64,000 nucleotides of DNA from Malacoraja senta (lineage: Eukaryota), in the NCBI GenBank assembly GCA_038087875.1, contig CM075979.1, positions 17,236,001-17,300,000 of the forward strand, written 5' to 3'. Below the pieces are notes generated by a model that was given only the letters and a program-made list of their open reading frames with translations, ran no database searches and was not told the origin of the DNA. The first letter of the stretch is position 1. Each line of letters opens with the position of its first letter. Both the position numbers and the translations under genes were made by a program. Below, piece after piece: positions 5,161-56,910 of this stretch.

Positions 5161-5591
5161 TCTTGTTAAAAAGCAGAAACAAATTTAAGAAAATGCATTT
5201 TCAATACACAGAGTCCTCACAATGTATTCTATGGCATACGATTGTTTAACCACAACATCCTCCCCTACTGCAAAATTCAGCAGGATTATAATCAAGTGCT
5301 TTTGGCTACAGGCTTTATCTCTATTTCTCTCTCCATATATTCTGCTTGAAGAGCTGATTACTTCCAGAATTTTCTGTATTTTATTAGCTGCTTAACATCT
5401 TGATATGACCTTTAAATAAATAGGTGTTGTGATTAAACATAAACCTCATGGAGAATACTGTCTTTAATCATTCTCATTGAAACCATTGAATTTGTTTAAC
5501 TTCAAAATTTGCTTTGTACAGAGTCCACTGTGTAAAACTGTGGATTGCAATGTAATTGCATCCAAATCCTGTAACTGTTATGAGCTTGTGT

Positions 5592-19585: not shown

Positions 19586-19670
19586 TTATCTCCAGCCATA
19601 TGCATTCCTTCCAAACTTGTACATTAACCTTCTATGCACCCGTTCCAGAATTCCAGTTTTGTAATAATGT
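19586..19670 (-). CDS. ELF5: ELF5 last coding exon (end of ETS domain, [27 protein letters not shown])
   Basis: Acceptor TGTTTTTCAG| and phase 2 joins AG|A = Arg. [13 protein letters not shown] without the extra Gly is ELF5-like rather than ELF3/EHF-like (YYKREILERVDGRRL). Confidence 0.93.
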
Positions 19671-20465
19671 CTGAAAAACAAAATAAAATGAAGTGATCTG
19701 TCAACAATTATTTCCCTCTGTAAAATGTGACAATCAGGTATTATTGGCAATAATAAACTACCAGTATTCAGGATTGGTCCATGAGTGATTCTATAATTGC
19801 AAAAGATTTGCAGCATGCTATCTCTTAACATATATAAACCGGATTTCCATAACCTTTCTTGCACTGTTACTTTCATTTATGCTCTGGAACTTGCACCTTC
19901 CCAATAGAACAAACCTTTAGCCTCTGCCCATCACTAACTCATAGAGTCATTGAGTCTTACAGTGTGGAAACAGGCCCTTTAGCCCAACTAACCCACACTG
20001 GCCAACATGTCCCATCTACACTAGTCCCATCTGCCTGCATTTGGCTCATGTCCTTCTAAACTTCTCCTATCCATGAACCTGTCTAAATGTTTCTTAAGCA
20101 TTCCAATAGTACCTGCCTCATTGACCTCCACCGGCAGCTCATTCCATACACCCACCATTCTTTGGGTGAAAATGTTACTCCTCGGGTTCCTATTAAATCT
20201 TCCTCCCGTCACCTTAAACCTATGTCCTCTGGTTTTCAATACTACCCTAGATATTTCAGATATTTCTCCCAGCAGTGATGAAGGAGCGACAATGTATTTC
20301 TATGTCAGGTTTGTTTGTATCTTGGAAGGAAACCAGCTGTTGAACCCTCTAGTGCCCTTGTCCATTGGTGGAAGAGACCCAGATTGGGGTGATCCAGACT
20401 AGTAACTGCAGTGCATTTTGTAAACATCTCATACTGCAGCCACAGTATTGTAGAGATTTAATGGT

Positions 20466-20993: not shown

Positions 20994-21189
20994 CTCAATG
21001 CTCTGCTTAGTTTCTCGTAGGTCATGTGCTCATTATTTTTCCTTTGTCCCCAGAGCTTAGCCAGAGAATCGGACTTCACAACTTTGAATATTCCTTCTCC
21101 TCTGTCTTCCCATTCCAAAATGCCGCTGTTTTTCTCAGGAGAGTGGAGAAGATTGCGAATAAATTCCCAAAGGTACTCTCTTTGCAAAC
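20994..21189 (-). CDS. ELF5: ELF5 ETS-domain exon, 196 nt ([14 protein letters not shown]...[11 protein letters not shown])
   Basis: Acceptor TTTTGCTTTCTCCTGAAG| and donor TGAG|GTAACA. It carries the ETS motifs [24 protein letters not shown] and [11 protein letters not shown]. Confidence 0.95.
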
Positions 21190-22010
21190 CTTCAGGAGAA
21201 AGCAAAAATCTCACTTACTCATATATCTGAAGAAGGGTCTCAACCCGAAACGTAACCCATTCCTTCGCTCCAGAGATGCTGCCGGACCTGCTGAGTTACA
21301 CCAGTATTTTGTGTCAACCTCATATATCTTATGTTCTGCATGTTACAAAAAAAAAATCTTCCCACTCCAGTTACCTCCCACACTCTAAAGTCGTATGGGT
21401 TTGGAAGTTAATTGGCTTTGGTAAAATTGTAAATTATCTGTAGTGTGTGTAGAATAGTGCTAGTGTCCGGGGATCGCTGGTCGGCGCGGACTCAGTGGCC
21501 GAAAAGGGCCTGATTCCACTGGATCTCTCAACTAAACTGAAGATTAATTGGCCAAATAATACTAATTGAGAGCCACCGCCTACAGCACCGCTCCTGGAGC
21601 CCCCTCCTCCACACACAGTGTACTGGGCTCCATCAGCATGATCTAGGCAGCAGCATGGCCTCCAGTGCTGCACTTAGGGAACCATATTAATGTATTGCCT
21701 TATATGGCAATATATGTGCAGCCATATTAACGTATTCCCATGCACATCATTGTGATACGGGGGGAAACCAGAGCATCCAGTTGAAACCCACAAGCTGAAC
21801 ATGCAAAGTCCACACAGACAGCAGCAGAGTCGGGACTGAACTTGATTGCTGGATCTGTGAAGGAGAAGCTCGACTAGCTACCTCCCTAAGAATTTGAAAC
21901 TGAGCATCAGCTTGGCACACTACATGGAAGTTTCCTGCGAAGAAGTTACCCAGCCTGCATTCAACATCTCCAGTGTCGAGGAGGCCATATTGTGTGCATC
22001 TGGGAACGTT

Positions 22011-23145: not shown

Positions 23146-24087
23146 GTTTTAAAGAAGGAACTGCAGATGCTGGAAAATAGAAGGTACACAAAAATGCTGG
23201 AGAAACTCAGCGGGTGCAGCAGCATCTATGGAGCGAAGGAAATAGGCAACGTTTCGGGCCGAAACCCTTCTTCAGACTGATAGGGGGTGGGGAGAAGAAA
23301 GGAAAAAAGGAAAAAAGGCGGAGGAGGAGCCCGAGGGCTGGGGGATGGGAGGAGACAACCAGAGGGCTGATGAAGGGGAGGGGACAGCAAGGGCTAGCAG
23401 AGTTGGGAGATTTCAATGTTCATGCCCCCAGGATGTAGACTGCCCAAGCGGAATATGAGGTGCATTTCCTCCAATTTCCGGTGTTGCTCGCTGTGGCCAT
23501 GGAGGAGACCCAGGACAGAGAGGTCAGATACGGAATGGGAGGGGGAGTTGAAGTGCTGAGCCACCGGGAGGTCAGGTGAGCCACCGGGAGAGCATCCGCT
23601 GCTCTAGATGTCAGCTGATCTACATCGGTGAGACCAAGCGGAGGCTTGGCGATCGTTTCGCCGAACACCTCCGGTCGGTCCGCAATAACCTACCTGACCT
23701 CCCGGTGGCTCAGCACTTCAACTCCCCCTCCCATTCCGTATCTGACCTCTCTGTCCTGGGTCTCCTCCATGGCCACAGCGAGCAACACTGGAAATTGGAG
23801 GAAATGCACCTCATATTCCGCTTGGGCAGTCTACATCCTGGGGGCATGAACATTGAATTCTCCCAACTCTGCTAGCCCTTGCTGTCCCCTCCCCTTCATC
23901 AGCCCTCTGGTTGTCTCCTCCCATCCCCCAGCCCTCGGGCTCCTCCTCCGCCTTTTTTCCTTTTTTCCTTTCTTCTCCCCACCCCCTATCAATCTGAAGA
24001 AGGGTTTCGGCCCGAAACGTTGCCTATTTCCTTCGCTCCATAGATGCTGCTGCACCCGCTGAGTTTCTCCAGCATTTTTGTGTACCT
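23146..24087 (+). mobile_element. Penelope-like retroelement 3' end (GIY-YIG) with an inverted pLTR copy and a 14-bp TSD
   Basis: ORF 23576-23875 (CSRCQLIYIGETKRRLGDRFAEHLRSV...HFN) is a GIY-YIG endonuclease. Arms at ~23182-23577 and ~23692-24087 are near-perfect inverted repeats. The TSD ACAGTTAACATTAC is at 23132-23145 and 24088-24101. Confidence 0.92.
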
Positions 24088-48660: not shown

Positions 48661-49420
48661 ATTCCCCAGAAATTCACAAGTATTTAAAACATCCAAAAGT
48701 ACTACAAATTAAATCAGGCTATTAAAGATTTCATAAACTAAAAATAAAAAAGTTTGAAATGTTTAAAATAATTAAATAAATTTAAATATATAAAATTATC
48801 AATTAAGTACTTTCAATTAATTCAAAAAGTTGTAAGTATTTCTGGAACTTGCCTATCTCCCTTAAAGCTGCTCCGCTCAATGCAAGTGAATGGAGTCACT
48901 GGATCTGCACAGGGTCCAGCCTAACACAGGTTTATCAGATGGGTTTAAGCGTGACTGCTTGATGGGGATTTCAAAGTCAGAGTACAATCAGAATGACAGC
49001 AAGGATCTCCTAAATAGTTCAGGACTTTCATGTTCCCACGAGACATCCTCGGATGTACTTTAGATTGTCAGTCCAGCCCTCCCCACAAGATCGCCGTACT
49101 TAGCTTCCTTATAGTGATCAGCTTCAGAAACTAGAGTTAATCTCTGGCCTGACATAACAGGCATCATGAAGGCCAATTGTAATGCTCCATCATCACTGGG
49201 ACCATAACCCAACTAATAAAGTGTAAACCAAGTCTGAGCCTGTGACATTCTGGCCTGCATCTTACAGTATCACACCAGAGATTTACTTTCAGAACAGGAA
49301 GGAACTGCAGATGCTGGTTTAAACCGAAGATAGACACAAAATGCTGGAGAAACTCAGCGGGATGGACAGTGTCTCTGGACAGAAGGAATGGATGACGTTT
49401 CAGGTCGAGACCCTTATTCA

Positions 49421-49570
49421 GATATATGAGTAAGTGAGAATCGTATTTTGCTTTCTCCTGAAGGTTTGCAAAGATAGTACCTTTGGGAATTTATTCATGA
49501 TCTTCTCCACTCCCCTGAGAAAAACAGCGGCATTTTGGAATGGGAAGACAGAGGAGAAGGAATCTTCGAA
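49421..49570 (+). pseudogene. ELF5: Inverted partial duplicate of the ELF5 ETS exon and its 3' splice site
   Basis: 49464-49570 matches the minus strand of 21189-21083 with about 7 substitutions, including GAG>TAG at 49475-49477. It retains GATATATGAGTAAGTGAGA...TTTTGCTTTCTCCTGAAG and the adjoining Penelope-derived repeat. Confidence 0.93.
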
Positions 49571-49639
49571 TCTATTTTTCCAGATTTCCTATACACTTAA
49601 ATAATTTCTGTACAAGGCCAGCCTGGCAATTGTCTAAGC

Positions 49640-49953
49640 ATAAAATAAAAGTTCTTACCTCCCTGCTCCTTGAAGCAGGGGAATCCCACATGGTCATAAA
49701 GAATTGGTGAAGTCAAAGTGCCGCAAATAGTTAGGTCCCTTAAATAGCAGTGGTAGCCAAAATAATCTGACATCATGCTCTGAAATGTAATTAAACAAGT
49801 TAATTTCCCTACATGAAAAATAACACACTAGTTTGTTTAATCTGAGGCTAAATTCTCTGAGTCTATACAACTTTTGTTGTGTAACTTCTTTAATTAATAA
49901 GTTTGTTATATTTCTCTAGCAGATAAAAATACGTTTAAAAAAGGAAACTACTT
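49640..49953. repeat. 314-bp direct repeat, left copy (giant TSD of the L1)
   Basis: Identical by eye to 56597-56910. It begins at the L1 endonuclease-type site AT/AAAA. Confidence 0.95.
49659..49776 (-). CDS. ELF5: ELF5 first coding exon, copy B (exon 49779-49659; MMSDYFGYHCYLRDLTICGTLTSPILYDHVGFPCFKEQG)
   Basis: Acceptor TACATTTCAG|AGCATG and donor GAG|GTAAGA. 39 aa plus 1 nt, phase 1. Aligns by eye with the human ELF5 N-terminus (YLRDLTICGTLTS ~ FLPNASFCDPLMS; FPCFKEQ ~ YPAFEHQ). Confidence 0.78.
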
Positions 49954-56596: not shown

Positions 56597-56910
56597 ATAA
56601 AATAAAAGTTCTTACCTCCCTGCTCCTTGAAGCAGGGGAATCCCACATGGTCATAAAGAATTGGTGAAGTCAAAGTGCCGCAAATAGTTAGGTCCCTTAA
56701 ATAGCAGTGGTAGCCAAAATAATCTGACATCATGCTCTGAAATGTAATTAAACAAGTTAATTTCCCTACATGAAAAATAACACACTAGTTTGTTTAATCT
56801 GAGGCTAAATTCTCTGAGTCTATACAACTTTTGTTGTGTAACTTCTTTAATTAATAAGTTTGTTATATTTCTCTAGCAGATAAAAATACGTTTAAAAAAG
56901 GAAACTACTT
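56597..56910. repeat. 314-bp direct repeat, right copy
   Basis: Directly follows the L1 poly(A); identical by eye to 49640-49953. Confidence 0.95.
56616..56733 (-). CDS. ELF5: ELF5 first coding exon, copy A (exon 56736-56616)
   Basis: Identical to copy B, with the acceptor and donor both inside the duplicated block. Confidence 0.78.

What the first reader, a model, noticed from the sequence alone, without database searches (positions are those of the whole stretch)
49298..49570. Antisense copy of the ETS exon's splice acceptor sits about 90 nt from the start-exon donor
Seen in sequence: 49421-49570, plus the adjoining repeat back to ~49300, is an inverted copy of ~21.32-21.08 kb, 28 kb away in the same transcription unit. 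It covers the polypyrimidine tract, the AG and 107 nt of exon, has a TAG stop and no poly(A). It has GAT (Asp) where the functional exon has AAT (Asn), and human ELF5 has Asp. Inference: ELF5 pre-mRNA can form a long-range duplex of about 150-270 bp. This could mask the ETS acceptor or bring the exon-2 donor next to it and loop out the 51- and 78-nt exons. That skip stays in frame (G|GT). It is a candidate self-antisense splicing switch, and also a recombination substrate for inversion.
Basis: partly seen in the sequence, partly recalled or inferred. Interest (0 to 1): 0.75.

Follow-up and report, generated by a model that had tools for sequence, protein, structure and literature searches.

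The report
Decaying inverted copy of ETS exon start
A skate gene for an ETS-type DNA-binding protein has, 28 kb upstream and in reverse orientation, a 148-base dead copy of the start of its main exon with the splice site in front of it; the copy is real and shared by related skates, but it drifts like junk DNA and nothing shows that it controls splicing.

Summary
Window 49328-49570 (+) is an inverted copy of 21320-21083 (gene strand), BLAST E 5e-82. It covers the polypyrimidine tract, the AG and 107 nt of the ETS exon, with the TAG and the GAT/AAT difference as described. It has two layers. The unique 148 nt are 94.4% identical. The adjoining ~90 nt are 80.9% identical and belong to a hyper-abundant interspersed repeat; the two repeat copies share no derived changes, and only the 49-kb one has the family's 5' head. 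This favours a DNA-repair event in which repeat homology primed copying into the intron tail and exon. DNA contigs of two related species carry the copy with the same right junction, so it predates their split. There it diverges no more slowly than its flank (4.8% vs 2.6-3.1%) and lacks the TAG. The copy keeps ancestral Asp; the live exon changed to Asn later. A duplex is thermodynamically strong (-370 kcal/mol), but the gene model behind the "switch" is unverified: no PNT exon lies in the window, the one RNA run had zero depth on the "start exon", and its ORF is frameshifted in one relative. Verdict: a neutral pseudo-exon fragment, with the splicing switch unsupported. An earlier scan note covers the neighbouring L1.

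The parts
49464..49570 (+). Dead copy of the first 107 nt of the ETS exon, antisense to the gene. TAG at 49475-49477; CAT GAT at 49496-49501.
   Evidence: 93.5% identical to 21189-21083 (7 mismatches). The translation still hits Pfam Ets (E 1e-5). tblastn with ELF5 homologues hits it with an in-frame stop.
49423..49463 (+). Copy of the last ~36 nt of the intron (polypyrimidine tract and AG at 49462-49463), with a 5-nt insertion.
   Evidence: 1 mismatch in 36 aligned nt plus a 5-nt indel. Contigs of relatives carry the insertion-type sequence.
49296..49422 (+). Resident member of a hyper-abundant interspersed repeat: 5' head 49296-49333 and core 49334-49422. It ends at the same family position as the 21-kb member.
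   Evidence: nhmmer places it at family positions 3-138. Its depth in DNA runs is 10^5-10^6 times single-copy depth. The core is only 80.9% identical to the 21-kb member, with no shared derived states.
20994..21189 (-). Functional ETS-domain exon (acceptor AG 21191-21190, donor GT 20993-20992). Its first 107 nt (21189-21083) are the template of the copy.
   Evidence: Pfam Ets E 3.8e-21. 71-75% identical to ELF5 proteins.
21190..21224 (-). Intron tail in front of the ETS exon (template of 49423-49463).
   Evidence: Alignment A1.
21225..21321 (-). Headless member of the same interspersed repeat directly upstream of the intron tail. An 11-mer, AGATATATGAG, is found on both sides of it (21329-21319 and 21228-21218).
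   Evidence: nhmmer places it at family positions 42-138; sequence read.
19589..19675 (-). Last coding exon of the ETS gene (end of the Ets domain and the stop codon).
   Evidence: tblastn 76% to ELF5 C-termini; ORF listed.
49659..49776 (-). Unverified. It lies inside the 314-nt perfect duplication 49640-49953 = 56597-56910.
   Evidence: ORF and phase. Perfect repeat. Zero RNA depth, and a 1-nt deletion at 49713 in organism C.

Best explanation
This is a neutral, slowly decaying pseudo-exon fragment made at the DNA level. A copy of a hyper-abundant interspersed repeat already sat at about 49.3-49.4 kb. A break at or near its position 49422 was repaired using another member of the same family as template. 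That member lies 28 kb away in the opposite orientation, immediately upstream of the ETS exon's acceptor. DNA synthesis primed in the repeat ran on for 148 nt through the intron tail, the AG and the first 107 nt of the exon. It then stopped and was joined to the other end at 49570/49571. The event happened before at least three skate species split. Since then the copy has accumulated changes at the background rate, mostly CpG transitions, and a stop codon in the window's species. It keeps the ancestral Arg-Asp codons that the live exon later changed to Arg-Asn. The ability to pair with the acceptor in RNA is a by-product, not a selected switch. Shown: the two-layer identity, the extra repeat head, presence in relatives and the lack of constraint. 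Inferred: the repair mechanism and the absence of function.
For: Identity steps from 80.9% (17/89) in the repeat core to 94.4% (8/143) in the unique part (Fisher p = 0.002; against the intron tail alone, p = 0.022). In the repeat core there are 10 copy-specific and 5 original-specific changes against the family consensus. The only state the two share against that consensus, G at 49390, is a position where the family itself varies (G in one loose-end consensus, A in the other), so there is no convincing shared derived change. The 49-kb element has a consensus-like 5' head (family positions 3-41) that the 21-kb element lacks. Both end at position 138, while other members run on to at least 177. 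The last mismatch before the unique part is at 49416, so a switch point falls in the shared TTCAGA. There is no poly(A) and intron sequence is included, so this is not a processed retrocopy. The flanks 49150-49284 and 49571-49953 are single-copy in DNA runs, so the copy is not inside a multicopy transposon. Contigs of organisms C and H span 49467-49953, with G at 49475 and A-C-G at 49497-49499. The copy part is 4.8% diverged and the flank 2.6-3.1%. The three versions (CGCAAT in the live exon, CACGAT in the relatives' copy, CATGAT in the window's copy) all derive by CpG transitions from CGCGAT, which encodes Arg-Asp. ELF5 proteins and the horn-shark homologue all have Arg-Asp at this position.
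Against: The counts are small. Part of the identity step could come from purifying selection on the live exon and its acceptor region, which removes one lineage's share of changes there. A stretch upstream of the 21-kb core (GTAACATGCAGA ... AAGATA) loosely resembles the repeat head, so that element may once have had a head that was later scrambled; this would allow a simple one-piece duplication. No empty site from an outgroup was available. No usable RNA data were obtained, so absence of function is inferred only from neutral divergence in two species pairs. In the same-species run, no contig carrying the window's copy-specific interior was laid.
Confidence: 0.6

Rival explanations
1. The whole 243 nt (repeat core, intron tail and exon start) was duplicated in one piece in inverted orientation, for example by a replication template switch, with no resident repeat at the target. 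The repeat part simply diverged faster, and the 21-kb element lost its head later. Still no function.
For: The two arms are collinear and share the same repeat/flank junction (CTTCAGA|TATATGAG). Weak head-like remnants lie upstream of the 21-kb core. Selection on the live acceptor and exon would lower divergence in the unique part.
Against: The 49-kb element has 38 nt of consensus-like head with no counterpart at 21 kb. The two cores share no convincing derived states. The intron tail is 97% identical against 81% for the adjacent repeat (p = 0.022).
Confidence: 0.22
2. The copy is a working cis-element. In transcripts that start upstream of it, it pairs with the ETS acceptor 28 kb downstream. 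This would mask the acceptor or loop out the intervening exons, or create an ADAR substrate that edits the ETS exon. That is the reader's self-antisense switch.
For: The predicted duplex is very stable (-370 kcal/mol; -236 for the unique part). The copy has been retained in at least three species. Inverted intronic repeats are linked to exon skipping (PMC13019027, PMC13019944), and functional RNA structures spanning tens of kb are reported for ATE1 (cited in PMC8052449).
Against: There is no constraint or compensation in the copy. The start exon and the 51- and 78-nt exons are ab initio only. RNA depth on the start exon was zero in the one RNA run. The start ORF is frameshifted in organism C. 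There is no CpG island at the putative start exon. The copy would sit in a short first intron that is normally removed before the partner arm is transcribed (inference). Masking the only DNA-binding exon would mostly destroy the product.
Confidence: 0.08
3. The repeat at 21.3 kb was transcribed through its own end into the intron and exon, and this read-through RNA was retrotransposed to 49.4 kb (3' transduction).
For: The family is extremely abundant and also present in RNA contigs. An active L1 sits next door.
Against: There is no poly(A) or simple-repeat tail and no convincing target-site duplication around 49296-49570. The supposed source lacks the head that the copy has. A T5 run directly after the 21-kb repeat would stop pol III.
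Confidence: 0.05
4. It is an assembly artefact: exon-containing reads were misplaced at 49.4 kb.
For: In the same-species run the only contig laid on 49398-49563 carries the original locus's states. The window's TAG/CATGAT states were not seen independently.
Against: Contigs join exon-like sequence to the unique 49571-49953 flank in the same species (1 mismatch in 420 nt) and in two other species.
Confidence: 0.02

Closest known systems
Inverted intronic repeat pairs (for example inverted Alu pairs) that loop out exons or promote circular RNAs
   Same: There are two reverse-complementary arms of about 150-300 nt within one (putative) transcription unit. Part of each arm is an abundant interspersed repeat. 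The predicted outcome is skipping of the exons in between (PMC13019027, PMC13019944, PMC4201285).
   Different: In the known cases both arms are intronic and were analysed within 0.5-5 kb of the exon. Here one arm covers the acceptor and 107 nt of coding exon, and the arms are 28 kb apart. The best-paired part is not the repeat but a unique copied segment. No skipping has been observed.
Editing-site complementary sequences (ECS) of ADAR targets such as GRIA2 (from general knowledge)
   Same: A non-coding sequence complementary to an exon could form an exon-containing duplex in the pre-mRNA.
   Different: Known ECS elements usually lie in the adjacent intron, are conserved together with the exon, and are defined by observed editing. 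This copy is 28 kb away and upstream, evolves neutrally, and no editing data exist.
Templated insertions from homology- or microhomology-primed repair and replication template switching (SDSA, MMBIR/FoSTeS; from general knowledge)
   Same: It is a short (about 150 nt) insertion copied from a template on the same chromosome tens of kb away, in inverted orientation. One junction lies in shared homology and the other has at most 2-3 nt of overlap.
   Different: The event is inferred from sequence only. The priming homology is a dispersed repeat rather than a few bases. No pre-insertion allele has been seen.
Gene-fragment capture by transposons (a Pack-type hAT with a TDP2 exon is reported in this same window, scan note s1-140262)
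   Same: A dead piece of an exon with its splice signal sits in non-coding DNA.
   Different: The copy and its flanks are single-copy in DNA runs, and no terminal repeats or target duplication bound it. It is therefore not cargo of a multicopy element.
Processed pseudogene or retrocopy
   Same: It is a non-functional copy of coding sequence with a stop codon.
   Different: It contains intron sequence and the acceptor, covers only part of one exon, and has no poly(A) tail or target duplication.

Membership tests
Inverted-repeat loop-out / exon-skipping element | Both complementary arms lie in the same primary transcript | tested here: inconclusive
   The acceptor arm is in the gene. Whether transcription starts upstream of 49.6 kb is unknown: RNA depth on the putative start exon was zero in the one RNA run, and no homology supports that exon.
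Inverted-repeat loop-out / exon-skipping element | The arms can form a stable duplex | tested here: met
   -370 kcal/mol (full arms) and -236 (unique part), against -43 +/- 5 for shuffled arms.
Inverted-repeat loop-out / exon-skipping element | A skipped or circular isoform is observed and depends on the arms | not testable with these tools
   The single read-laying run gave no RNA coverage of the locus.
ADAR editing-site complementary sequence | Non-coding sequence complementary to the edited exon | tested here: met
   49464-49570 is 93.5% complementary to the exon in RNA terms.
ADAR editing-site complementary sequence | Conserved or co-varying with the exon across species | tested here: not met
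   The copy part is 4.8% diverged against 2.6-3.1% for the flank in two species. Changes in the exon (21154, 21140) and in the copy (49475, 49498, 49564) are uncompensated.
ADAR editing-site complementary sequence | A-to-I editing observed in the exon | not testable with these tools
   No RNA contigs were laid on the exon-like stretch, and contigs drop rare variants.
Processed retrocopy | Intron-less, with a poly(A) tail and target-site duplication | tested here: not met
   It contains 36-41 nt of intron plus the AG. There is no A-run after 49570 and no matching flanks.
Templated insertion by homology-primed repair | Template nearby on the same molecule, with one junction inside shared homology | tested here: met
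   The template is 28 kb away. The switch falls between 49416 and 49423, inside the repeat sequence shared by both loci.
Templated insertion by homology-primed repair | A pre-insertion allele shows the recipient site without the insert | not testable with these tools
   All three species examined already have the copy. No outgroup DNA could be read.
ELF5 (ETS transcription factor with PNT domain) | Ets DNA-binding domain of the ELF5/EHF/ELF3 type | tested here: met
   Pfam Ets E 3.8e-21. The best named relatives are ELF5, at 71-75% identity.
ELF5 (ETS transcription factor with PNT domain) | N-terminal PNT (SAM_PNT) domain | tested here: not met
   An HMM of 18 full-length ELF5 proteins run against the six-frame translation finds only the two Ets exons and the copy. 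The horn-shark homologue is annotated as 94 aa with Ets only. PNT exons beyond the window are not excluded.

The most novel reading that the evidence does not exclude
In skates, a repair accident placed an antisense copy of the ETS exon's acceptor near the 5' end of the same gene. In slowly spliced transcripts the resulting 150-240-bp duplex masks the acceptor or draws ADAR onto the DNA-binding exon. This would give a lineage-specific, self-contained attenuator or isoform switch of an ELF5-like factor, acting over 28 kb.
Probability: 0.06. Interest if true: 0.6.

Novelty: new member of a known kind. Interest (0 to 1): 0.25.

Why it matters
If the best explanation is right, the main value is as a clean natural example of how a dispersed repeat can seed the copying of neighbouring unique sequence, here a splice acceptor and part of an exon, to a distant site. 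It also works as a dated molecular fossil. The dead copy shows that the live skate exon changed a conserved Asp to Asn after the duplication. It further warns that exon-like inverted repeats inside genes arise and persist for neutral reasons, so complementarity alone is weak evidence of RNA-structure regulation. Only if RNA data showed skipping or editing that depends on the copy would it become an unusual long-range regulator.

Tried and rejected
1. RNA evidence. Only one run looked like RNA (X1, another species). It had zero depth on the copy and on the putative start exon. The other holders turned out to be DNA runs.
2. The trick of laying mRNA contigs on the copy at 88% likeness, to link the start exon and the ETS exon in one contig, gave nothing in X1.
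3. Finding the skate's own annotated protein. The P0002 search returned only tetrapod ELF5 proteins. The last-exon ORF search found no candidates. The ETS-exon ORF search gave only the horn-shark 94-aa protein and one unrelated fragment. The horn-shark DNA could not be fetched.
4. PNT or N-terminal exons. tblastn and an ELF5 HMM on six frames found none.
5. The 51- and 78-nt exons. A scan for open AG...GT intervals gives many candidates. Only 46531-46481 and 29235-29158 have strong signals, and nothing independent supports them.
6. Target-site duplication around 49296-49570. Only loose, indel-ridden similarities were found; rejected. The AGATATATGAG 11-mer on both sides of the 21-kb repeat core is noted but unexplained.
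7. Rfam on the repeat gave no family, and no hammerhead match either.
8. A CpG-island scan found none at 49.6-49.8 kb.
9. Assembly artefact: rejected on the junction-spanning contigs in three species.

Full report
OBSERVATION. The gene lies on the minus strand. Its Ets-domain exon runs from 21189 to 20994, with acceptor AG at 21191-21190 and donor GT at 20993-20992. The exon translates without stops and hits Pfam Ets at E 3.8e-21. A last coding exon ends at 19589. The repeat finder reports two adjoining inverted pairs. One is 21083-21207 / 49446-49570 (125 nt, 94%). The other is 21209-21320 / 49328-49439 (112 nt, 83%). BLAST joins them into one 238-nt match at 87.4%, E 5e-82.

On the plus strand the copy shows the pyrimidine tract, AG at 49462-49463 and 107 nt of exon (49464-49570). 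It has TAG at 49475-49477 where the exon has GAG, and CAT GAT where the exon has CGC AAT. It has a 5-nt insertion in the intron tail and no A-run at its end. The one correction is the left limit. Homology to the 21-kb locus begins at 49328-49333, whereas 49296-49333 has no counterpart there.

THE ARMS HAVE TWO LAYERS. The left part of each arm belongs to an interspersed repeat with about a dozen members in this 64-kb window. In three DNA runs its depth is 10^5-10^6 times the single-copy depth. Against a family profile, the 49-kb member covers positions 3-138 and the 21-kb member only 42-138. Other members run on to at least position 177.

The two cores are 80.9% identical (17 mismatches in 89 nt). 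The unique part that follows, intron tail plus exon, is 94.4% identical (8 in 143). The difference gives Fisher p = 0.002, or p = 0.022 against the intron tail alone. Polarised with the other members in the window, the core shows 10 copy-specific and 5 original-specific changes. The single state the two share against that consensus (49390) is a position where the family itself varies, so there is no convincing shared derived change.

Yet both elements stop at the same family position and continue with the same unique sequence (CTTCAGA|TATATGAG...). The last mismatch before the unique part is at 49416.

The simplest reading is that the two repeat copies are independent insertions. A broken end in the resident 49-kb copy then used the 21-kb copy as template, and synthesis ran 148 nt beyond it through the intron tail, AG and exon start. 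The end was finally joined at 49570/49571.

A one-piece 243-nt duplication is the main rival. It needs faster divergence in the repeat and later loss of the 21-kb head. It is not excluded, for two reasons. Selection on the live acceptor and exon lowers divergence in the unique part. Also, faint head-like motifs lie upstream of the 21-kb core.

Retrotransposition is unlikely, since the copy contains intron, has no tail and has no target duplication. Transposon cargo is unlikely too, since the flanks and the copy are single-copy in DNA runs.

IS THE COPY REAL, AND HOW OLD IS IT? Run X2 differs by 0-1 bases from the window over 590 nt of unique flank, so it is the same species. It has a contig joining exon-like 49534-49563 to the flank up to 49953 and beyond. 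Runs of two other organisms (C and H) have 830-nt contigs spanning 49467-49953, with 17-19 substitutions. Shorter contigs in those runs (49403-49474 and 49403-49488) carry the insertion-type intron tail. The copy, its right junction and its neighbourhood therefore predate the split of these species.

In the relatives, position 49475 is G, so there is no stop codon. Positions 49497-49499 read A-C-G, and 49564 is A. The three versions of the hexamer are CGCAAT (live exon), CACGAT (relatives' copy) and CATGAT (window's copy). All derive by single CpG transitions from CGCGAT, which encodes Arg-Asp. ELF5 proteins and the horn-shark homologue all have Arg-Asp at this position.

One gap remains. In X2 the only contig laid on 49398-49563 carries the original locus's states, so the window-specific TAG and CATGAT have no independent support. 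The tool warns that contigs show presence, not absence.

IS IT CONSTRAINED? Between the window and the two relatives, the copy part (104 nt) differs at 4.8% and the unique flank (383 nt) at 2.6-3.1%. The difference is not significant, and if anything the copy is faster. Changes in the copy (49475, 49498, 49564) and in the live exon (21154, 21140) are not compensated in the other arm. This is what a neutral relic looks like.

THE GENE MODEL BEHIND THE SWITCH. tblastn with twelve ELF5-type proteins, and an HMM of 18 full-length ELF5 proteins run against all six frames, find only the two Ets exons and the copy. No PNT or N-terminal exon is detectable in the 43 kb upstream.

Its peptide resembles nothing. 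The locus-specific contig of organism C has a 1-nt deletion at 49713 inside this ORF. The one RNA run has zero depth across it. There is no CpG island there.

The exon lies in the 314-nt perfect duplication 49640-49953 = 56597-56910. An earlier scan note (s1-140064) reads this as the target duplication of a young L1. I confirmed the repeat but not the L1.

A scan for open 51- and 78-nt AG...GT intervals gives many candidates. The ones with strong signals are 46531-46481 and 29235-29158. They are ab initio only.

The single cartilaginous-fish relative that surfaced is annotated in the horn shark as a 94-aa, Ets-only 'ETS homologous factor'. Its gene spans 21.7 kb, and its first coding exon supplies only Met plus one base. 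The true upstream structure of the skate gene, and whether the copy is transcribed with it, are therefore unknown.

COULD THE DUPLEX ACT? Thermodynamically, yes. ViennaRNA gives -370 kcal/mol for the full arms and -236 for the unique 148 nt, against -43 +/- 5 for shuffled arms. Several lines of published work bear on this:
- Inverted Alu pairs are linked to exon skipping, but were analysed within 0.5-5 kb of the exon (PMC13019027).
- Conserved long-range pairings were catalogued up to 10 kb, with the note that ATE1 uses structures spanning far more.
- ADAR sites are enriched in stable pairs regardless of the distance between the arms (PMC8052449).

So 28 kb is unusual but not forbidden. That intron should normally be removed minutes before the partner arm is made (inference from co-transcriptional splicing). 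Efficient masking of the only DNA-binding exon would also mostly inactivate the product. As a substrate for inversion it is poor: 88% identity overall, with a longest perfect run of 50 nt.

COMPARISON AND VERDICT. The feature works like nothing that has been shown. It resembles inverted-repeat loop-out elements and ADAR complementary sequences in geometry only, and it fails the conservation test for the latter. By origin it fits homology-primed templated insertion.

I rate it a real and well-dated but ordinary kind of genomic scar. It is a new member of a known kind, with interest about 0.25. I give a roughly 6% chance that it has the regulatory role proposed.

Noticed in passing
window 49640-49953 and 56597-56910: A 314-nt direct repeat at 100% identity, 6957 nt apart, duplicates the putative start exon and its donor. 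The upstream copy is followed by a long T-rich run on the gene strand. The scan's note s1-140064 already reads it as the target duplication of a young L1.
   Followed up: partly
window 23182-23577 and 23692-24087: A 396-nt inverted repeat, 99% complementary with a 114-nt spacer, lies about 2 kb upstream of the ETS acceptor. It contains a member of the same abundant repeat. It is a far better local hairpin former than the 28-kb pair and sits in the same putative intron.
   Followed up: no
window 21154-21152 (live exon) vs 49499-49501 (copy): In the window's species the live ETS exon has Asn where ELF5 proteins and the horn-shark homologue have Asp (VRDLL/VRDIL). The dead copy shows that this change postdates the duplication. 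Whether related skates share it could not be seen.
   Followed up: partly
window 21329-21319 and 21228-21218 (minus strand): The 11-mer AGATATATGAG occurs on both sides of the headless repeat core in front of the ETS exon. It may be a target duplication of a doubly truncated insertion, or a by-product of rearrangement. Unexplained.
   Followed up: partly
window 49285-49446 (repeat family; other members at 5586, 11810, 15715, 16614, 18536, 18628, 23146, 23953, 46866, 57227): This repeat family has summed contig depth in the millions in three skate DNA runs and is also abundant in an RNA run. There is about one member per 5 kb in this window. Rfam has no match for it, hammerhead models included.
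   Followed up: partly
window 21190-64000, minus strand: No PNT-domain exon is detectable upstream of the Ets exons. The horn-shark homologue is annotated as a 94-aa Ets-only protein. Cartilaginous fishes may therefore have a PNT-less ELF5/EHF-like gene next to RAG1.
   Followed up: partly
window 49398-49563, run X2: In the same-species DNA run, the only contig laid on the copy's interior carries the original locus's states. No contig shows the window's TAG, CATGAT or 5-nt insertion. This could be graph simplification, a filter or a polymorphism; unresolved.
   Followed up: no
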